Source: Podarcis muralis (lineage: Eukaryota). Taken from it: 64,000 nucleotides of DNA. The position numbers were made by a program, and so were the translations under genes. Each line of letters opens with the position of its first letter. Positions within the stretch are counted from its first letter, which is position 1. Location of the stretch: positions 112,902,001 to 112,966,000 of the forward strand of contig NC_135656.1 in the NCBI RefSeq assembly GCF_964188315.1, in the 5' to 3' direction. Below, piece after piece: positions 1 to 64,000 of this stretch. The notes below the pieces were generated by a model. It saw nothing but the letters and a program-made list of their open reading frames with translations. It was not told the DNA's origin and searched no databases.

Positions 1-445
1 CTCCTCCCCATCGCCAGCCCCGCAAACTCGGGGGACAGCGGGAGAGGCGCAGCGCGCCCTTGCCGCTGCCCCCCGACTTGGCTGGAAGGCTGGCGGGGGG
101 AGAAGCCTGCTCCTCCCCATCGCCAGCCCTGCAAACTCGGGGGACAGCGGGAGAGGCGCAGCACGCCATCTCGCTGTCTCCCGACATGGTTTGGAGGCTG
201 GCGGAGGGCTTCCTCCTCCCCCAGCCCCGCAAGCTCCCCCAGCCCCGCAAGCTCCCATGGCTCTGGGTCCCGTTCTGGGGGAGGGGGAAGCTCGGGCTTC
301 CCCCGCCCCAGCCCCACGCCTGGCGGTGGGGGAATAATTTTTCCCCCCTTTATTCCCCCCCCCCCCCGCCAATTTTTCCCGCGGCACAGCAGGCAACGTC
401 TCGCGGCACACTAGTGTGCCGCGGAACACCGGTTGGGAAACACTG
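1..445. mobile_element. End of a hAT-type element with internal GC-rich 109-bp repeats (same family as 63009-64000)
   Basis: Ends GGTTGGGAAACACTG; it is the reverse complement of about 63009-63450. Confidence 0.7.
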
Positions 446-4640: not shown

Positions 4641-7248
4641 GCTCCTGTTGCTTTGCCTCAGCTCCTGCCTACCTAGCAGTTCAAAAGCACGCTGGTGCAA
4701 GTAGATAAATAGATACTGCTGTGGCGGGAAGGTAAACAGCGTTTCCATGCAATCTGACTCCTTGCAGAATCTCCCTTGGCTAAACTCTCTTTTACCCATT
4801 CAAGAACTGGGGCATGGATGGGACCCCCAGCCACAGCCATGGTGTGTGTGTGTGTGTATGTGTTAAATTTCACTCTCTTTTGCCCATTCAAGAAGTGGGG
4901 GGATTTTCCTTTCCAGGAAATTGCAGCTGGTGACATTCTGGTCTCTGCTTCCCCCTGCAGGTGTGAAGGTAGCTGGACCTCAGACCCTCTTATGTATTTT
5001 TAAAATGTTAAGAATGGTAGTGCGAAAGATGGGAAAAGGTCGCTTCTGAAGTCATATAACATAGGATGGATGCTAGTGTATTTTCAATCTGCTGTACAGC
5101 TCCTAGCTTTCCCCCACTGATCCCATCTACCACCTGCCCATGTGGAAGAGAACTTTTATTGAAAAAACTTTTAATGTCATGCTTTCTGAAAATTGAAAAG
5201 TTTCTTCGCGGGCAGTATTTGATGATCTTTTTTCTTTTCTTTTTTTTTACTTGTTTACCAGTATGGCATCATTGCACTCTTCAGTGGTTTATAGGCATTC
5301 CTAATAAAAATGTGAAAATATTTTTAGGTGCCAGATGAAAACACTCCTCTTCAACCAGGCCTTTGGCTGATTAATATTCTACAGCGTTTTAATGTGGGGT
5401 TTTTTTTTTGGGGGGGGGGACGACAGACTATCCTGGATATAAACACGGTGTAGCAAGAGAGGTCAGCTCACTTCCCAAAAGGACACCTTTCCCCTTTCTT
5501 ATTCTATAGAACCATTCCAATATAGCTTTGAGAAATGCTCAGGTTATGGGTGGCAGAGAGCCCCAAGCTTGAGCCTTCTAGGCCTTGGGGGATTGGCTTT
5601 CATTTCTAATCCGAATGCTGAGATCCAGAAATGGACCCAGGTGCAAAATACGAGCTTATGCAGGGAAGCCCCTGAAATCTGCCCCTCACCCAAACTGGAT
5701 TGACTCCTCCTGCAGACATTCAGGGTCAACACAGGAAGGTCTGAAGAGGAGCTACAACATAGAGAGGGACGGCTTTTAAGCAAATCTCTGAAGGGACCCT
5801 TGTTAAGATTTCAGATTCTGAGTGAACAGTGTGTTGGACTTAGGATGACAAGGTCTGGGTTCAAATCCCTTTTGACCATAAACTTTAATGCGTCTCCTTT
5901 TTCTAAGTCTCTCAGCTCAGCCTCTTCTACGTCACAGGGTTCCTCTGAGGATAAAGCAGGATATTACCCTCCTAAAATCCCTGGAGGAAGTATCATGGGG
6001 AATGGATATTATACTGTTGAGTTCCAAACACCACAGGAGTAACAAGAAGTACAATCTTTAATAGAATCAAACATGTTAGCGCATGAAACATATCCCCAAA
6101 TTATTTTAGGCCCGTTATACAAAAGGATAAGAGGAGGAGATCTCTAAAAATACAGATAAGTATCTGACTCTTCATTACAAACCACCTTGGTGAAAATGAT
6201 TTTATACATGGAAATTTACCACACACATATACCCCAAAATTCTCAAGATTGCCAATGTTTTCTCCTCAGAGCTTCTGACAGAGGCTCTTCACTGTCGAAG
6301 GGGATTTTGTTACATCGAGACCCAAAACCTGCAGAGGGGTTACGTCTCTGGGGTCAGCAGGCAAAGGCAATATAGTGTAAGTCAGGAAGACCCCCGAAAA
6401 CGCCCCACCAAAGAACCATACTGCTTGACTGAAGCCAGAGATCTTGACCTTTCTAGAGGTCAGTGAGCAAGGTGGACTTAGAAACTCTTTCCACCAATGC
6501 CAAAGGCCCCCCCCCCCCAATGCTTTCTGCGCTGTGGAGACTATTGTGAGATCTTGCACAGTCCTTTCCAACAGTTTTCCCCGTTCTTTCACCCTCTTTC
6601 TATTTATTAATTAATTTGTGTTTTGACAAAGGGCTCCAGGCTGAGATCACAGAAGAAAGTTGCCAGTGAGTTTAGGGCCAACTACTCAACTAGCAAACAG
6701 GTCTCTTGGGATATGGAGATTTTGCTGAATTGCCACATAAGCTTCCCTGAGGAGTAGCAAATAAAGGGGATTTTGGAACTTCCATCTCCCTGGACAGTGG
6801 AGATCTTGGGGGAGGAAAATGGAATCTGAGAGCAAGATTGAGACTGAGGAAGGTTTTAAGTGATTCCTGTACATAATTCTGACTTTATTCAGAAAAGATG
6901 ATGGTATTATCTCTAGAAATCTTAAGCCAGAGTTGGAAGCTGGAGAGAGAACTACATCAAAAGAGGAATGTGATTAGGGTTGCTGTTGTTTCCTAAATTA
7001 TTTTCTTGCACCTCGTGCACCGACAGAAGTAGCCCATTCCCAAGGGAGAGAGAACAGGCAGGTTTGGGGACTGACAGGGGACCAAATCAATCAGTGTCAT
7101 TTACAAAACTGGCCCAAGAAGGGAGAGTTGCATCATGACTGACACAAGGGATGGCCAATCACAGTTCTGGAAATATGGTTTCTCCTTCAGCTCAGTCCTG
7201 AAAAGGAGACTGAATATGTCATAATGGCAATGAATATACACTTGTCTG

Positions 7249-36826: not shown

Positions 36827-39800
36827 ATGGCTGCTTCTGGGGGTCCCGTGAAGGATCTCTTCGAGGAAGCCACTTGCTCCATCTGCCTGGAGTATTTCAG
36901 GGATCCAGTGATCATCCCGGAGTGCGGGCACAACTTCTGCCGATCCTGCCTGATCCAGTATTGGGGGAAATCCGAGGCAAAGGCTTCCTGCCCTGAGTGC
37001 AGGAAAACAGTTCAGGAAAAGAACCTCATCCCCAATCGGTCGCTGGCAAATGTTGCAGAAAAAGCCAAGATGCGGGCAGAAGAAAAGGGGAGGGTCTGCG
37101 AGAAGCACCAGGAGCCCCTGAAGCTCTTCTGCCAGGAGGATGAAGCCCCCATCTGTGTGGTGTGTAAGGAATCTAAGGAGCACCAAAGCCACAAGATGGT
37201 TCCTCTAGAGGAGGCTTTCCAGGAGTACAAGGTAGGAAAAGGTAGCGGTTCTTTCTTGGGGGGTGGAATAGCTTCAGACAAGAGGGGCTTGCAAAATAAA
37301 AAATAAATATAAAATGTTGTAATGTATTCTCTCCTCTTGCCGCCCAAAAGGAATCCTCCAGCAAGAGATCTTGTGCAGCCTGATAGGACTAAACTTCTGA
37401 AACTTTATACAATAAGCATTTATTTTTCTTTTTGAGAGATTAAAGTGCACCACCTGAATGCAGGCTGCAGTAACTCCCCTGGGAGGAAAGATTACAACAT
37501 CTAGGATTAATTTAATAAAAAGGAGGGGGCACATTTTGGAGGTGTGTTCAGTGTGGGGGATAAATAGCAAACACCCCATGTTTCTCAGCTCTTGATATAG
37601 GGCAGCCCCATTTCTGCCTCGTCTGGGATGAAAAAGGGAAACTCCTGCAAAATACCCTGGAATGTGGGGCAAGGAGCAAACATACGATTCAGCTTGCCTG
37701 TTAAGGTGTAACGCAGCCCAACTTGGACTTTGTTTTCTTTTCAGGATCAGATCAGCACCTGCCTAGACAATGTGAGGAAGGAGAGAGAGAAAATTCTAGT
37801 ACTTAAAGCAGACACAGAAAAGGAAAGCCAAGACCTGCTTGTAAGCATCATTGTTACTTGAAGGTGAAAAAGTGCTATACAGCCATATCTTGGGTTGCGA
37901 ACGTGATCCATGTGGGAGGCACGTTCACAACTCGCAGCACTGCGTCTGTGCAGAGGCGTAATGTAATTTTGTGTTTCTGCGCATGCATGAGTGCCAGAAC
38001 GTGGAAGTAACCCATCCCGGTACTTCCGGGTTCAGCGCAGTCTGCAACCCAAAATGCGCAACTTGCAGTGTTCGCAACCCAAGGTATGACTGTAGTCTAG
38101 AATCCATATCTGGGGGGAAATGAAAATGGAATACAGAAAGAGGTTTATTCTTGAACAGCCTTATTTCCCACAGAACATGAAAGACCATTTAAAGGAGGGG
38201 GTGGGCTTGTGTTTATGAAGCTCTTTCCCTGCTGAATATTGGCGTAATCTCTCTAAAATGTCAGGCGTTCCCTTCCAGGGGAATTTGGATAACTGGCCTC
38301 TTCATCCTTCAAGAGCAGACTAGATGCCTGATTTTGGCCCACTGTTCTCTTCTTTCAATCTCTTTGCTGCAGAAACAAACAGATGCAGAGAGGGAAAAGA
38401 TGGTGGCTGAGATCAGGCGACTGCACCAGTTTCTGGAAGAACAAGAGAAACGTATTCTGGTCCAGATGGCAGAAGTGGAGAAGGAGATTGCAGCCAAAAG
38501 GGAGGAGCACCTGGCCAGACTCTCCAGGGAACTCTCCTCTTTTGAACACGCCATCCGGGAAATGGAGGAGAAGCTTCAGGAACCAGCGAGTGAACTTCTG
38601 CAGGTGAGGCCTCATCCTGATGCGAGAGGGTGGAGTGTGCTGCTTCATAGTACAAGCAGGAGGATAACATGTCTTTTTTTTTTTTTTATAATAAATTTTT
38701 ATTAGTTTTCCATGAATAAAGAAGAGACAAAACAAAAACATAAACATAAACAAACAAAAATACGACTTCCCCATACCACCCCTTTTCTGCATTCTTGTTT
38801 CAAGATTTTTCAGCAACCCTCTGAGCATAACTTAAATATATTTCATGTATTTAACTTCAGTTAGTTATTAATACAACTGTAGTTCTTTATCTCTTATAAC
38901 TCTGAGCCCCTAATTTTCCAAATTACAACAGTTTTTAAGATAAACTTTAAATTTGTTCCAATCTTCATCCACCGCCTCTTTCCCCCGGTCTCGAATTCTG
39001 CCAGTCATCTCTGCCAGTCCCATATAGTCGATCACCTTCGTCTGCCATTCTTCCAACGTGGGTAAATCTTGCGTCTTCCAATACTTTGCTAGAAGGATTC
39101 TTGCTGCTGTAGTGGCATACATAAAAAATGTCCTATCCTTCTTTGGCACCATTTGGCCCACCATACCCAAGAGAAAGGCCTCTGGTTTTTTAACAAACGT
39201 TCTCTTCAGAACTTTTTTTTATTTCATTATAGATCATTTCCCAGAAAGCCTTAATCTTCGGGCAGGTCCACCAAAGGTGATAGAAGGTTCCCTCCGTTTC
39301 ACTACACTTCCAACACTTGTTATTGGGCAAATGATAGATCTTTGCTAACTTAGCAGGAGTCATGTACCACCTGTAGATCATTTTCATAATGTTTTCTTTT
39401 AAGGCATTGCATGCCGTAAATTTAACACCAGTGGTCCATAACTGCTCCCAGTCAGCAAGTTCAATGTCATGCCCAATATCCTGTGCCCATTTAATCATAT
39501 TAGATTTCACCATTTCGTCTTGAGTATTCCATTTCAACAGCAAGTTGTACATTCTTGACAAATTTTTAGTATTGGGTTCTAACAGTTCTGTTTCTAATTT
39601 TGACTTCTCCACTTGGAAGCCTTTCTTTCTGTCCTGTTTGAATACTTCATTTATCTGTCGATAATGTAACCAATCTCTCACCTTAAACTTCAGTTTCTCA
39701 AAACTCTGCAATTTTACATTTTCACCATCTTGTTCTATAATTTCACAATATTTAGGCCAATTAGAACCCATATTCAATTTTTTCACCTCTTTTGCTTCCA

Positions 39801-51629: not shown

Positions 51630-52291
51630 NNNNNNNNNNNNNNNNNNNNNNNNNNNNNNNNNNNNNNNNNNNNNNNNNNNNNNNNNNNNNNNNNNNNNNN
51701 NNNNNNNNNNNNNNNNNNNNNNNNNNNNNNNNNNNNNNNNNNNNNNNNNNNNNNNNNNNNNNNNNNNNNNNNNNNNNNNNNNNNNNNNNNNNNNNNNNNN
51801 NNNNNNNNNNNNNNNNNNNNNNNNNNNNNNNNNNNNNNNNNNNNNNNNNNNNNNNNNNNNNNNNNNNNNNNNNNNNNNNNNNNNNNNNNNNNNNNNNNNN
51901 NNNNNNNNNNNNNNNNNNNNNNNNNNNNNNNNNNNNNNNNNNNNNNNNNNNNNNNNNNNNNNNNNNNNNNNNNNNNNNNNNNNNNNNNNNNNNNNNNNNN
52001 NNNNNNNNNNNNNNNNNNNNNNNNNNNNNNNNNNNNNNNNNNNNNNNNNNNNNNNNNNNNNNNNNNNNNNNNNNNNNNNNNNNNNNNNNNNNNNNNNNNN
52101 NNNNNNNNNNNNNNNNNNNNNNNNNNNNNNNNNNNNNNNNNNNNNNNNNNNNNNNNNNNNNNNNNNNNNNNNNNNNNNNNNNNNNNNNNNNNNNNNNNNN
52201 NNNNNNNNNNNNNNNNNNNNNNNNNNNNNNNNNNNNNNNNNNNNNNNNNNNNNNNNNNNNNNNNNNNNNNNNNNNNNNNNNNNNNNNNNNN
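51630..52291. other. Assembly gap (662 N)
   Basis: Run of N. Confidence 1.
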
Positions 52292-52549
52292 NGTCAGACG
52301 GGATCGTGTGTTATCTCACAAGAGCATCCAGAGCCCAGAAAGCAAGATGGGGGGCTTACAAATTTGGTGCCCTATATCCTGCTGTGCAAAGGGCTTCTAA
52401 GCCCCTCTGTTTTGCTTACGGACCTCCAAGAAAGGTTTCTCAAGGAGTCTCCCTGACTTGACTTGCTAATCCCCAGAACGTAAGAGCCTCTGACAGAAGT
52501 TCCAAGGACAGAACAGAGACAATTTGGGGAATTTCAGGGGGTGGTAGTG

Positions 52550-56444: not shown

Positions 56445-59400
56445 ATGGCTGCTTCTGGGGGTCCCGTCCGGGATCTCAGCGAGGAAGCCACTTGCTCCAT
56501 TTGCCTGGATTATTTCACGGATCCAGTGATCATCCCGGAGTGCGGGCACAACTTCTGCCGATCCTGCCTGACCCAGTATTGGGGGAAATCCGAGGGAGAG
56601 GCTTCCTGCCCTCAGTGCAGGAAAACAGTGGAGCAAGGCAGCATCAGGCGAAACCTGCAGCTGGCAAATTTTGTGGAAATAGCCAAGAAATTTAGCCATC
56701 TGGGGGGAAAAGAGGGAAAGGAGGGAGAAGGAAAAGGAAGGGTCTGTGAGAAGCACCAGGAGCCCCTGAAGCTCTTCTGCCAGGAGGATGAAGCCGCCAT
56801 CTGTGTCGTGTGTGACAGATCCAAGGAGCACAAAAGCCACGAGGTGATTCCTCTGGAGGAGGCTTTCCAGGAATACAAGGTGGGAAAAGGCAGTGGGTCT
56901 TTATTGGGGGTGGAAGAGCTGCAGACAAGAGGGGTTTGCAATAATGATAATGATGATGATGTAATGTATTCTCTCTACTTGCCACCCAAAAGGAATTCTC
57001 CAGCAAGAGATCTTGTGCAGCCTGATAAAACTAAACTTCTGAAACTTTATACGATAAATATTTCTTTTTCTTTTTGAGGGAGTAAAGTGCCCCCAGTGAC
57101 CCCTGAATGCAGGCTGCAGTAACTCCCCTGGGAGGAAAGATTACAGCATCTAGGATTATTTTAATAAAAAGGAGGGGGGTTGTTGGAGGTGTGTTGAGTG
57201 TGGGGGACAAATAGCAAAACCCCCATGTTTCTCAGCTCTGATATAGGGCAGCCCCATTTCTGCCTCCTCTGGGATGAAAAAGGGGAGCCTCTGCAAAAGA
57301 CCCAGGGATGTGGGGCAGGGAGTAAACACAGGATTCAGCTTGCCTGTTAATGTGTAATGCAGCCCAATTTGGATTTTGTTTTCTTTTCAGGATCAGATCA
57401 GCAGCTGCCTAGACAATGTGAGGAAGGAGAGAGAGAAAATTCTCATATTTAAAGCAAACACAGAAAAGGAAAGCCAAGACCTGCTTGTAAGCACTATTGT
57501 TACTACTTTAAGATGAAAAATGCTATAGTCTAGAACAGTGGTTCCCAAACTTTTTTCAAGGAGGGCCAGATTTGATGAAGTGAAGGGCCGTGAGGGCCAA
57601 CCAAAGACCAAAGATGTTGCGCTTTTCGCTTTTTTAAGGATTGAAATTGTTGACCTTTTTTTTTTTTAGGGTTGAAGTTGTTGAGGGGTTTTTTATGGCT
57701 TTCACCCCATAAACTGCCAAAGGGGCTGGATTAGGCCCCAAAATGGACTTTGGACATGTCTGTGGTAGAGCCTTTGGCCAACAAGGGAATCAAAGATGTG
57801 CTAAAGGTGGGAAAGGAGATTGCAGAGGAGCTGAACGGATTATTTGCACCTGTCTTTAGAGCAGAAGACTCGCCAGTAACATAAAAGTAATAAGGTGAAA
57901 CAGGAGAGATGCGAGCCGGGAAGGGCGACGGAAGGGCCCGGCCGGGCAGCGACTCACCTCGCAGGCGGTTCGCCATCCCTTTGGCCCCGGCGAGGCGGCG
58001 GCGGCTGCTCGGCGACCTCCTCGCCCGTCTCCTCGTGAGGGAAACGTGGCATCGGCGTCAGGGCGCCTCCAGCGGAGCAAGGCCGCTGGCCTTTGCCTTC
58101 TCCGCCTTCCTCCTTTTTGCCACGCCGCCTGCGCCCCCGCTGCCTCCCGCTCTCGGCGGGCCCTCCGGGCATTGGGCGTCGGGCTCCAAGGGCGAAGGCG
58201 CCCCTCCTTGGCCCCACTCCACCACGCCCATCTGCAGCACGGGCCCCACCGCCGCGCTCCCGCCAGCCACCCTGGCTGCTTTGCCCGCCTCCTCCTCGGG
58301 CTCGAAGCCCGGGTTGTCCCGGCTCCAGGCCTGCCTCAAGCAAGACGAGAGCAGCGGCGAGCAAGACAAAGGAGGAGGAGAAGGAGAAGAAGCGCTGACG
58401 ATGACTCCGCCACCGCCGCTGCTGCCTGGCGGGTCCCGCAGCCGCCCCAGTTCCAGATGCTCCAGGCCGCTGGGAGGGCAAAGTCCCACCATGGCCCCCT
58501 GACCCTGGACGAAGGCCGCCGCCTCAGAAATTTTCTCTCAGGCCGGTCGGGTAATGGCGTGGGAAGGGAGTGCCTTCGCTTTCTTCACCGCCCGCCTTCC
58601 AGCCCCCAGCCCCGCCCACAGCGCGCCGCCTCGCAGGGGGAAGCGGGCAGGCCGGGCTGGCGGCTACACGGGCCACATGACGAGGTCTGGCGGGCCGGAT
58701 TCGGCCCGCGGCCCTTGTGTTTGACACCCGTGGTCTAGAATCAATATCTGGGGGGGGGGGGAGGAATATGGAATACAGAAAGTGGTTTATTTTTGAACAG
58801 CCGTATCTCCCACAGACGTGAAAGACCATTTAAAGGAGGGGGTGGGAAGCTCTTTCCCTGCTGAATATAGGTGTAATCTCTCTAAAATTTCAGAAGTGGC
58901 CTTCAAAAGGAATTGGGATAACTGGCCGCTTCATCCTCAAGAGCAGACTAGATGCCTGATTTTGGCCCACTCTTCTCTTCTTTCAACCTCTTTGCTGCAG
59001 AAACAAACAGGTGCAGAGAGGGAAAAGATGGCGGCTGAGTTCAGGCGACTGCACCAGTTTCTGGAAGAACAGGAGAAACGTATTCTGGCCCAGATGGCAG
59101 AAGTGGAGAAGGAGATTGCAGCCAAAAGGGAGGAGCGCCTGGCCAGACTCTCCAGGGAACTCTCCTCTCTTGACAGCCTCATCCGGGAGATGGAGGAGAA
59201 GCTTCAGGAACCAGAGAGCGAACTCCTGCAGGTGAGGCCTGGTCTTGATGCGAGAGGGTGGAGTGTGCTGCTTCAGACTACAGGCAGGAGGATAACATAT
59301 CTTAGCCCCCACCCCACCCCCCGCAAAGAAGCTGCTGTAAAAAAACACAATTAGTACATGATGGGTGAAAGGCCTGGGGTCACAAAAGGGGTGCTGCTAG

Positions 59401-63008: not shown

Positions 63009-64000
63009 CAGTGTTTCCCAACCGGTGTTCCGCGGCACACTAGTGTGCCGCCAGACGTTGCCTGGTGTGCCGCGGGAAAAATTGGCGGGGGGGGGGAATA
63101 AAGGGGAAAAAAATTATTCCCCCACCGCCAGGCGTGGGGCTGGGGCGGGGGAAGCCCGAGCTTCCCCCTCCCCCAGAACGGGACCCAGAGCCATGCCGAA
63201 GCTGCGCGCAGCTTTGGCATCGCTCTGGGAGCTTGCGGGGCTGGGGGAGGAGGAAGCCCTCCGCCAGCCTCCAAACCATGTCGGGAGACAGCGGGATGGC
63301 GCGCTGCGCCTCTCCCGCTGTCCCCCGAGTTTGCAGGGCTGGCGATGGGGAGGAGCAGGCTTCTCCCCCCGCCAGCCTTCCAGCCAAGTCGGGGGGCAGC
63401 GGCAAGGGCGCGCTGCGCCTCTCCCGCTGTCCCCCGAGTTTGCAGGGCTGGCGATGGGGAGGAGCAGGCTTCTCCCCCCGCCAGCCTTCCAGCCAAGTCG
63501 GGGGGCAGCGGCAAGGGCACGCTGTGCCTCTCCCGCTGTCCCCCGAGTTTGCGGGGCTGGCGATGGGGAGGAGCAGGCTTCTCCCCCCGCCAGCCTTCCA
63601 GCCAAGTCGGGGGGCAGCGGCAAGGGCGCGCTGCGCCTCTCCCGCTGTCCCCCGAGTTTGCAGGGCTGGCGATGGGGAGGAGCAGGCTTCTCCCCCCGCC
63701 AGCCTTCCAGCCAAGTCGGGGAGCAGCGGCAAGGGCACGCTGTGCCTCTCCCGCTGTCCCCCGAGTTTGCGGGGCTGGCGATGGGGAGGAGCAGGCTTCT
63801 CCCCCCGCCAGCCTTCCAGCCAAGTCGGGGGGCAGCGGCAAGGGCGCGCTGCGTTTCTCCGCTGTCCCGGACGGCTTTCAAAAGCCTGCCTTCAAAAGCC
63901 GTCCGGGACAGCGGAGAAACGCGCTGCCTTTCTCCGCTCTCCTGGGAAGGCAGGCAGGGGGGAGCAAAGACTTTCGCCCCCGCCCGCCTTCAGAAGAGGT
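63009..64000. mobile_element. hAT-type element with a GC-rich tandem array, in TRIM F intron 6 (continues beyond the window)
   Basis: Starts CAGTGTTTCCCAACCGG; absent in paralogous introns. Confidence 0.7.
63293..63868. repeat. 109-bp GC-rich tandem repeat, about 5.3 copies
   Basis: The CGCTG(C/T)GCCTCTCCCGCTGTCCCCCG motif recurs at 63302, 63411, 63520, 63629 and 63738; a truncated variant at 63847 keeps the 109-bp spacing. Confidence 0.95.

What the first reader, a model, noticed from the sequence alone, without database searches (positions are those of the whole stretch)
57528..58740. Pack-TIR-like hAT transposon that has captured PKD2 (polycystin-2) exon 1 and inserted it into a TRIM intron
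Seen: a 1197-bp insert between TRIM F exons 2 and 3, bounded by an exact 8-bp duplication GTCTAGAA. Gene A has the empty site. The termini CAGTGGTTCCCAAAC / GTTTGACACCCGTG are imperfect TIRs. Inside, on the minus strand, is about 570 bp of very GC/CpG-rich DNA translating to [21 protein letters not shown] and MANRLRG, ending at CGAG|GTGAGT and followed by about 200 bp of non-coding sequence. Known: NTCTAGAN 8-bp TSDs typify Charlie-group hATs; [12 protein letters not shown] is a hallmark of the PKD2 N-terminus; as recalled, PKD2 exon 1 ends at phase 1 in the G of ..LR-G. Inferred: capture was at DNA level, because the donor and apparent intron-1 sequence came along, so this is not a retrocopy. 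The fragment has a stop (58058-58060) and frameshifts, so it is non-coding. Host-gene capture by DNA transposons is well known in plants (Pack-MULEs) and much less reported in vertebrates.
Basis: partly seen in the sequence, partly recalled or inferred. Interest (0 to 1): 0.9.

Follow-up and report, generated by a model that had tools for sequence, protein, structure and literature searches.

The report
PKD2-exon-carrying hAT transposon in lizard
A cut-and-paste (hAT) transposon in wall lizards picked up the promoter, first exon and start of intron 1 of the kidney-disease gene PKD2, then jumped to at least three places, one of them this TRIM intron; the donor gene still shows how the capture happened.

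Summary
A 1197-bp insert (57536-58732) lies in TRIM intron 2 between exact 8-bp duplications GTCTAGAA. Three TRIM paralogues in the window have the empty site.

Compared with the true PKD2 loci of Podarcis muralis, P. lilfordi, Lacerta agilis and Zootoca vivipara:
- 57763-58659 is PKD2 DNA: 167 bp upstream of the ATG, all of coding exon 1, and 195 bp of intron 1.
- The "left arm" 57536-57762 is a complete 227-bp hAT MITE. It sits in PKD2 intron 1 of Podarcis with its own target duplication and is absent from Lacerta and Zootoca.
- Only the last 73 bp (58660-58732) are foreign to the PKD2 locus. They are a high-copy hAT end.

Two further full copies occur on other chromosomes of P. lilfordi, with different 8-bp duplications (GACTAGGA, CTGTAGGT). 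The composite therefore transposed after a single capture on the Podarcis stem.

The window copy is a decaying pseudo-exon with two frameshifts, a stop and CpG loss.

Likeliest origin (inferred): repair synthesis from a broken hAT element entered the PKD2 promoter and ended by annealing at the resident MITE.

This is a new squamate member of the rare multicopy Pack-TIR kind. The scan has already noted other Pack-hATs with other cargos in this genome.

The parts
57391..57486 (+). TRIM exon 2 (96 nt, coiled-coil). The donor GTAAGC follows at 57487.
   Evidence: ORF and frame. RNA contig joint 57486->59001 with GT..AG. RING and B-box in the upstream exon 56445-56882.
57528..57535 (.). Left copy of the 8-bp target-site duplication GTCTAGAA
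   Evidence: Present once in three paralogous empty sites.
57536..57762 (+). Left arm: a complete 227-bp hAT MITE ('MITE-A'). Its outer terminus is CAGTGGTTCCCAAAC (57536-57550) and its inner terminus is CAGACATGTCCAAAG on the minus strand (57762-57748). It was copied from PKD2 intron 1.
   Evidence: Collinear with P. muralis and P. lilfordi PKD2 intron 1. Absent from the Lacerta and Zootoca PKD2 loci, which show the empty site. The first ~70 bp are very high copy: depth 141,749 against about 200-370 in the flanks.
57763..57957 (-). PKD2 intron 1, first 195 bp. It includes the inner target-duplication copy of MITE-A (57763-57770, CTCTACCA on the minus strand) and an old interspersed-repeat piece.
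   Evidence: Aligns to intron 1 of PKD2 in four lacertids. The repeat piece is also in Lacerta and Zootoca intron 1.
57958..58492 (-). PKD2 coding exon 1 (ATG at 58492-58490, donor CGAG|GTGAGT at 57958|57957), now a pseudo-exon
   Evidence: PDB hit to polycystin-2. Against P. muralis exon 1: 34 substitutions in 520 sites, a 1-nt deletion near 58166, an 11-nt deletion near 58000, and a stop at 58060-58058.
58493..58659 (-). 167 bp upstream of the PKD2 ATG (5'UTR and proximal promoter, CpG-rich)
   Evidence: Collinear with the PKD2 loci of four lacertids up to exactly 58659.
58660..58732 (+). 73-bp hAT right end (terminus ...GTTTGACACCCGTG). This is the only part not found at the PKD2 locus.
   Evidence: No match in 110 kb of PKD2 loci. 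High copy: depth 16,116. Other copies of this end diverge from the insert exactly at 58659 (loose ends). The same 73-bp end and the same junction are in both P. lilfordi copies.
58733..58740 (.). Right copy of the target-site duplication GTCTAGAA
59001..59231 (+). TRIM exon 3 (231 nt, coiled-coil)
   Evidence: Acceptor ...ctgcag|AAACAA, ORF frame, RNA joint.

Best explanation
This is one copy of a small family (three copies found, perhaps up to about eight) of a non-autonomous hAT element. Its body is a DNA-level copy of the 5' end of the wall-lizard PKD2 gene.

Shown:
- A 227-bp hAT MITE inserted into PKD2 intron 1 on the Podarcis stem.
- Later, 1124 bp of that locus became joined to a 73-bp right end of another hAT element. 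The 1124 bp run from the MITE's outer terminus, through 195 bp of intron 1 and all of exon 1, to 167 bp upstream of the ATG.
- The composite has two usable termini. It was moved in trans at least three times, each time making a new 8-bp duplication. One landing site was intron 2 of this TRIM gene.
- The copies have since decayed, mostly by CpG-to-TpG change. The window copy cannot encode the PKD2 N-terminus.

Inferred origin:
- A hAT element elsewhere was broken or excised and was being repaired by synthesis-dependent strand annealing (gap filling).
- The strand growing inward from its right end left its template after 73 nt. It re-primed in the open, G+C-rich PKD2 promoter with at most 1-2 nt of overlap and copied about 1.1 kb.
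- Repair was completed when the strand reached the resident MITE. The MITE's terminal ~70 bp are homologous to the other end of the broken element.
- So the resident MITE set one border of the cargo and became the new left arm.

The captured promoter, exon and splice donor point antisense to TRIM. I see no sign that they are used here.
For: Insert and host site:
- Target duplication and empty paralogous sites.
- Polycystin-2 identity.

Donor locus:
- 57536-58659 is collinear with P. muralis PKD2 (L003 5928->4842) and P. lilfordi PKD2 (L004 5940->4827).
- Lacerta and Zootoca PKD2 match only from about 57767 to 58659 and have an empty site for the MITE. In Podarcis the MITE is flanked by CTCTACCA/CCCTACCA.
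- The right end is absent from all four PKD2 loci.
- G at 57560 is shared by the three Pack copies and the PKD2 MITE, while about 99% of family depth has A (table 3).

Other copies:
- Two further full copies in P. lilfordi, L001 9757-10935 and L007 5757-6955. They have the same internal junctions and their own duplications GACTAGGA and CTGTAGGT, in unrelated flanks.
- Extra diverged contigs over the cargo in every DNA run, with summed depth of about 2-8 single-copy equivalents.

Phylogeny and decay:
- The three copies form a clade (98%), sister to the Podarcis PKD2 genes (85%). Together (97%) they group apart from Lacerta and Zootoca.
- 28 of 52 and 19 of 36 copy-specific changes are CpG>TpG/CpA.
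- Frameshifts and stop.
Against: - The origin mechanism is inferred from anatomy only. The recipient element and the first locus are unknown.
- Overlap at the 58659|58660 junction is at most 1-2 nt, which is no better than chance.
- Replication-fork template switching (FoSTeS) predicts the same product.
- All three Pack copies share C at position 9 of the left terminus, where both PKD2 MITEs have T. That could be a stem mutation or a trace of the recipient's own end.
- Copy number in P. muralis is only a rough estimate from unitig depth.
- The left junction of the window copy was not among the contig pieces shown.
Confidence: 0.8

Rival explanations
1. In-situ macrotransposon. A second hAT element once lay just upstream of the PKD2 promoter. 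Transposase paired its outer end with the outer end of the intron-1 MITE and moved everything between them. The donor allele was then lost.
For: hAT ends cluster around the PKD2 5' region: the MITE in intron 1, and an older hAT-like terminus about 0.9 kb upstream of the ATG in all four lacertids. The left arm is the resident MITE itself. From my own knowledge, paired use of ends of neighbouring Ac/Ds elements is established in maize.
Against: Only 73 bp of the right end are present. It is the inner side of that end, not a terminus, that abuts PKD2 at -167, so an extra internal deletion is needed. No trace of such an insertion is seen at -167 in two Podarcis species or two outgroups. Excision would also have removed exon 1 of an essential gene.
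Confidence: 0.12
2. [quoted passage not shown] 2021), rather than double-strand-break repair, joined the hAT end to the PKD2 locus.
For: The product is the same: an abrupt junction with minimal overlap, a parent on another chromosome, and several copies with distinct duplications, as in the frog, alligator and fly cases.
Against: Nothing in the sequence separates it from gap repair. It does not by itself explain why the cargo ends exactly at a resident MITE terminus, whereas annealing at homology does.
Confidence: 0.2
3. The captured CpG-island promoter, first exon and splice donor are active at the new sites. They would give antisense or chimeric transcripts, making the copy a functional regulatory or gene-birth cassette rather than inert DNA.
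For: The cargo is still CpG-rich (observed/expected 0.79) and keeps the GTGAGT donor. In P. lilfordi the third copy keeps an open exon-1 frame. It is annotated as exon 1 of a two-exon 'hypothetical protein' (P0161, CAI5787293.1), spliced from the captured donor to an exon about 3.7 kb outside the element.
Against: In the one RNA run laid, depth is zero over 58023-58590. The only RNA contig on the exon's 3' end carries the parental letters (57970 G, 57988 A), so it is PKD2 mRNA. The window copy has frameshifts and a stop. The P. lilfordi model may be an ab initio artefact. More than half of the changes are methylation-type CpG decay.
Confidence: 0.1
4. Retrocopy, plain segmental duplication or assembly error.
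For: None beyond the presence of a gene fragment away from its gene.
Against: Intron and promoter DNA are present and there is no poly(A). There are exact 8-bp duplications at three independent sites and precise empty sites. The same structure appears in a second species' assembly, and junction contigs appear in three samples.
Confidence: 0.02

Closest known systems
Multicopy Pack-TIRs of vertebrates, e.g. Pack-hAT-N8_XT carrying the CAPSL 5'UTR in Xenopus tropicalis (Tan et al. 2021, PMC8277862)
   Same: A non-autonomous hAT with host-gene 5' sequence between its ends. It has several copies on different chromosomes with distinct 8-bp duplications, and the parent gene is retained elsewhere.
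   Different: - The cargo here is larger: about 900 bp of gene plus a resident MITE, against 291 bp.
- It includes proximal promoter, a whole coding exon, the splice donor and intron.
- The donor locus explains one arm of the element, whereas the origin of the frog and alligator cases was left open.
- The only lizard in that survey (anoCar2) yielded no Pack-TIR.
Pack-MULEs of rice and other grasses
   Same: TIR elements that duplicate gene fragments at DNA level and amplify them. From my own knowledge (Jiang et al. 2011), they are biased toward G+C-rich 5' ends of genes.
   Different: A different superfamily (Mutator, 9-10-bp duplications), with long TIRs, thousands of copies, and plant hosts.
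Filler DNA and abortive gap repair in Ac/Ds and P elements; Ac/Ds macrotransposons and composite insertions (maize; from my own knowledge)
   Same: hAT elements whose interior is replaced by ectopic sequence through template switching during break repair, or that move flanking DNA by pairing ends of neighbouring elements.
   Different: Those are experimental or recent events in plants and flies. Here the event is an old natural one in a vertebrate, inferred from comparative sequence only.
Helitron capture of promoters and first exons in vespertilionid bats (e.g. Thomas et al. 2014, PMC4224331, listed but not read here; from my own knowledge)
   Same: Vertebrate DNA transposons that pick up and spread promoter plus first-exon cassettes.
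   Different: Rolling-circle elements without TIRs or target duplications. Capture is by read-through, not by break repair.

Membership tests
hAT superfamily, non-autonomous element | 8-bp target-site duplication | tested here: met
   GTCTAGAA (window), GACTAGGA (L001) and CTGTAGGT (L007). The resident MITE at PKD2 has CTCTACCA/CCCTACCA.
hAT superfamily, non-autonomous element | Short imperfect terminal inverted repeats beginning CAG/CAnnG, with a target preference around a central TA(G) | tested here: met
   CAGTGGT(T/G)CCCAAAC and CA(C/T)GGGTGTCAAAC match at 10 of 15 positions. Family termini CAG(G/T)GGTGTCCAAAC appear in loose-end consensi, preceded by ..TCTAA... Three of the four target duplications share a central TAG; the PKD2 MITE site has TAC.
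hAT superfamily, non-autonomous element | Mobilised by a hAT transposase (BED, DDE and hAT dimerisation domains) | not tested
   The element has no transposase and the autonomous partner was not sought. GGGCC/GGCCC motifs recur in both subterminal regions and may be binding sites; that is inference.
Pack-TIR (Tan et al. 2021) | Host, non-TE sequence lying between the two ends of a TIR element | tested here: met
   57763-58659 is PKD2 DNA between high-copy hAT ends.
Pack-TIR (Tan et al. 2021) | A parental copy can be identified and is retained | tested here: met
   Intact PKD2 next to ABCG2 in P. muralis (L003) and P. lilfordi (L004).
Multicopy (transposition-dependent) Pack-TIR | Two or more copies with the same chimeric structure and different target duplications at unrelated loci | tested here: met
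   Window copy plus L001 and L007.
PKD2 (polycystin-2) exon 1 | Sequence identity to the PKD2 N-terminus and collinearity with the PKD2 locus, including the exon-1 donor | tested here: met
   93.5% nucleotide identity to P. muralis exon 1 at aligned sites.
Processed retrocopy | No introns or promoter, a poly(A) tail, and L1-type duplications of variable length | tested here: not met
   195 bp of intron 1 and 167 bp of upstream DNA are present, there is no poly(A), and there are TIRs with 8-bp duplications.

The most novel reading that the evidence does not exclude
The hAT family of wall lizards would be a systematic collector of CpG-island promoters and first exons. The proposed reason is that its MITEs settle in 5' introns and promoters, and break repair that strays into such open DNA is completed only when it meets a resident MITE. 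On this reading, every Pack-hAT noted in this genome (PPAT, RANBP9, CRPPA, PKD2 and others) should have a resident MITE at one border of its parental segment. The dispersed promoter-exon-donor cassettes would occasionally seed chimeric genes, as the P. lilfordi model P0161 hints.
Probability: 0.3. Interest if true: 0.8.

Novelty: new member of a known kind. Interest (0 to 1): 0.6.

Why it matters
Gene capture by cut-and-paste transposons is common in plants but sparsely documented in vertebrates. The one broad survey found only four multicopy cases (frog and alligator), found none in its single lizard genome, and could not say how the multicopy ones arose.

In this case the donor locus, two outgroup empty sites and three transposed copies are all available. 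They show that one arm of the mobile element is a transposon that already lived next to the captured exon. This gives a concrete and testable rule for how such elements form.

This scan has flagged many similar elements in the same genome, so the rule can be tested at once. It bears on how promoters and first exons get shuffled in vertebrate genomes.

There is also a practical consequence: the cargo is mis-annotated as "hypothetical protein" genes in P. lilfordi.

Tried and rejected
- Searching the window for further copies of the insert or its ends found none. That is expected at about one left end per 170 kb.
- Inverted-repeat search inside the insert gave only chance G+C-rich pairs.
- Pfam has no model for the PKD2 N-terminus or for the repeat piece at 57750-57884. 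I suspected a LINE ORF2 fragment from its peptide. I could only show that it is ancestral PKD2 intron sequence in Lacerta and Zootoca and moderately repeated.
- A distant squamate exon-1 contig (L002) was too diverged to test the intron.
- The look-up of encoding contigs failed once because it was busy. It had no record for PKD2 isoform X2; isoform X1 worked.
- The search of earlier findings by sequence was blank.
- I considered the reverse direction, that the PKD2 MITE arrived by gene conversion from a Pack copy. I rejected it because the MITE at PKD2 has its own target duplication and the outgroups have the empty site.
- I could not test whether the TRIM-intron insertion is orthologous in other Podarcis species.
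Full report
**1. The observation**

The window has GTCTAGAA at 57528-57535 and again at 58733-58740, around a 1197-bp insert.
- The insert starts CAGTGGTTCCCAAAC and ends GTTTGACACCCGTG.
- When the flanks are joined with one copy of the octamer, they align without a break to three paralogous TRIM introns in the same window: 2439-2288 at 95%, 22725-22576 at 88%, and 13581-13431 at 86%. The insertion is precise and the duplication is not chance.
- The host is a TRIM gene. The exon at 56445-56882 has RING and B-box domains.
- An RNA contig joins 57486 to 59001 with GT..AG, which makes 57487-59000 intron 2. The contig differs by one letter from the window and may come from a close paralogue.

**2. 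The cargo is PKD2**

The interior is 68-75% G+C.
- The minus-strand ORF 58492-58061 hits only polycystin-2 among all solved structures (E 1.7e-7).
- A protein search found Podarcis and gecko PKD2 exon-1 products.
- I obtained the full-length lacertid proteins. I then fetched the true PKD2 loci of P. muralis (L003), P. lilfordi (L004), Lacerta agilis (L005) and Zootoca vivipara (L006), each next to ABCG2 where that flank was fetched.
- Against P. muralis exon 1 (544 nt), the window copy has 34 substitutions in 520 aligned sites and six indels. Two indels break the frame: 1 nt near 58166 and 11 nt near 58000. The stop lies at 58060-58058.

**3. What was copied**

The insert aligns to the Podarcis PKD2 locus continuously from its first base, 57536, to 58659 (L003 5928->4842; L004 5940->4827).

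Lacerta and Zootoca match only from about 57767 to 58659. Their intron 1 is uninterrupted where Podarcis has about 230 extra bases. Those extra bases are a complete small hAT MITE:
- termini CAGGCATGTCCAAAG and CAGTGGTGTCCAAAC, matching at 11 of 15 positions;
- flanked in PKD2 by CTCTACCA and CCCTACCA;
- a single related octamer in the outgroups.

The insert therefore consists of:
- the resident MITE, 57536-57762;
- 195 bp of intron 1, 57763-57957, beginning with the MITE's inner duplication copy;
- exon 1, 57958-58492;
- 167 bp of upstream DNA, 58493-58659;
- a 73-bp hAT right end, 58660-58732, which is not found anywhere in the four PKD2 loci.

The stretch taken as the transposon's own left arm was also copied from the PKD2 locus.

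**4. Repeat status of the ends**

Contigs of three DNA runs were laid at 80% likeness.
- Summed depth is 141,749 over 57526-57596 and 16,116 over 58662-58732, against about 200-370 in the TRIM flanks and 45-126 over the cargo.
- Other copies of the right end diverge from the insert exactly at 58659 (loose ends, 0.99 agreement).
- At 57560 the window, both P. lilfordi copies and both PKD2 MITEs have G, while about 99% of family depth has A. This fits a left arm derived from the PKD2 MITE or its subfamily.
- Both subterminal regions carry GGGCC/GGCCC motifs.

**5. It moved after capture**

One hit of the protein search, a "hypothetical protein" of P. lilfordi (P0001), lies in a second full copy of the element, L001 9757-10935.
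- It has the same junctions.
- It has its own duplication GACTAGGA.
- It sits inside what looks, from its tRNA-like head (my own reading, not tested), like a SINE, with flanks unrelated to TRIM.

The other member of that protein's cluster (P0161) led to a third copy on another chromosome, L007 5757-6955, with duplication CTGTAGGT.

In the laid runs, extra diverged contigs cover the cargo.
- Some have the gap pattern of the parental exon.
- One fits neither the parent nor the L001 copy.
- The summed depth of these other copies, the parental exon included, is about 2-8 single-copy equivalents.

**6. Timing**

- In a maximum-likelihood tree of the shared ~890 bp, the three copies form a clade (98%).
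- That clade is sister to the two Podarcis PKD2 genes (85%). Together (97%) they group apart from Lacerta and Zootoca.
- Each copy has a private branch of 3-4.6%, on a short common stem of 1.1%.
- This indicates one capture on the Podarcis stem, after the MITE insertion and probably before the muralis-lilfordi split, then a brief burst of transposition and long independent decay.
- More than half of the copy-specific changes are CpG>TpG/CpA: 28 of 52 and 19 of 36. CpG observed/expected has fallen from 0.93-0.96 in the Podarcis parent genes to 0.79-0.87. That is what loss of CpG-island protection would give.
- The copies keep 21-36 bp of intron 1 that today's Podarcis PKD2 genes have since deleted.

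**7. Mechanism**

Shown: DNA-level copying of a contiguous donor segment that includes a resident MITE, an abrupt junction to a truncated hAT end, and later trans-mobilisation.

Inferred:
- The composite arose by template switching during repair of a broken or excised hAT element.
- Synthesis from the right end left its template after 73 nt.
- It re-primed in the PKD2 promoter with at most 1-2 nt of overlap.
- It ran through exon 1 and intron 1.
- It was resolved by annealing at the MITE's terminal homology with the other end of the break.

This explains why the cargo ends exactly at a MITE terminus and why the right end is truncated at a non-terminal point.

A two-element macrotransposon formed in situ needs an extra deletion and an upstream insertion, of which no trace remains. 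Fork-stalling template switching (Tan et al. 2021) gives the same product and cannot be told apart here.

**8. Function now**

- The cargo is antisense to TRIM and is spliced out with the intron.
- In the one RNA run laid, depth over 58023-58590 is zero. The contig on the exon's 3' end has the parental letters, so it is PKD2 mRNA.
- I take the window copy to be inert.
- The third copy, in P. lilfordi, keeps an open exon-1 frame. It is annotated as exon 1 of a two-exon gene spliced from the captured donor to flanking DNA. This is a lead, not evidence of expression.

**9. Comparison with what is known**

- Tan et al. 2021 (PMC8277862) found 370 Pack-TIRs in 100 animal genomes, 208 of them hAT.
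- Only four were multicopy (three in Xenopus tropicalis, one in alligator), and their origin was unresolved.
- Their only lizard genome gave none.
- Only three papers in the searchable library use the term, and none I found concerns squamates.
- Earlier notes of this scan name the genome as Podarcis muralis and list other Pack-hATs with promoter and first-exon cargos: PPAT in 10-20 copies, RANBP9, CRPPA and others. I did not test those.
- The PKD2 element is thus a new member of a known but rare kind, in a lineage where the kind seems unusually productive. It has a donor locus that exposes how it was made.

Noticed in passing
window 37880-38093: In the paralogous TRIM intron, a ~210-bp MITE sits next to the equivalent of the hAT target octamer. 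It has a TA duplication and TIRs CAGCCATATCTTGGGTTGCGAAC / CAGTCATACCTTGGGTTGCGAAC (Tc1/mariner type). Two different DNA transposons hit the same few bases of paralogous introns.
   Followed up: partly
L007 6001-10432 (P. lilfordi OX395136.1) and L001 10001-10285 (OX395139.1): Two P. lilfordi 'hypothetical predicted proteins' are products of the captured PKD2 exon 1: CAI5787293.1 (250 aa) and CAI5792364.1 (94 aa). The 250-aa model splices from the captured donor to an exon about 3.7 kb outside the element. This is either a mis-annotation or a chimeric transcript.
   Followed up: partly
L003 4089-4108, L004 4230-4249, L005 2238-2257, L006 1780-1799 (minus strand): An older hAT-like terminus, CAGTGGTTCCCAACCTTTCT, lies roughly 0.8-1.2 kb upstream of the PKD2 ATG in all four lacertids. 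So the PKD2 5' region has been hit by hAT elements more than once.
   Followed up: no
L003 about 5555-5640 and L004 about 5560-5650, against window 57840-57900: The Podarcis PKD2 genes have lost 21-36 bp of intron 1 that the transposed copies and Zootoca still have. The Pack copies preserve an older state of the donor intron.
   Followed up: partly
window 63369-63821, 80-96, 431-445 (-) and 63009-63023 (+): There is a tandem array with a 109-bp period near the window's right end, with a related piece inverted at the left end. Each lies beside a hAT-like terminus CAGTGTTTCCCAACC. These may be two copies of another repeat-bearing element.
   Followed up: no
window 57750-57884 (+): An old interspersed-repeat piece inside PKD2 intron 1 has the peptide ...KEIAEELNGLFAPVFRAEDS, which resembles a LINE ORF2 region from memory. 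About 35-40 related contigs per run cover it. Its family was not identified.
   Followed up: partly
window 51630-52292: A run of 663 N (assembly gap or masked). It was left untouched.
   Followed up: no
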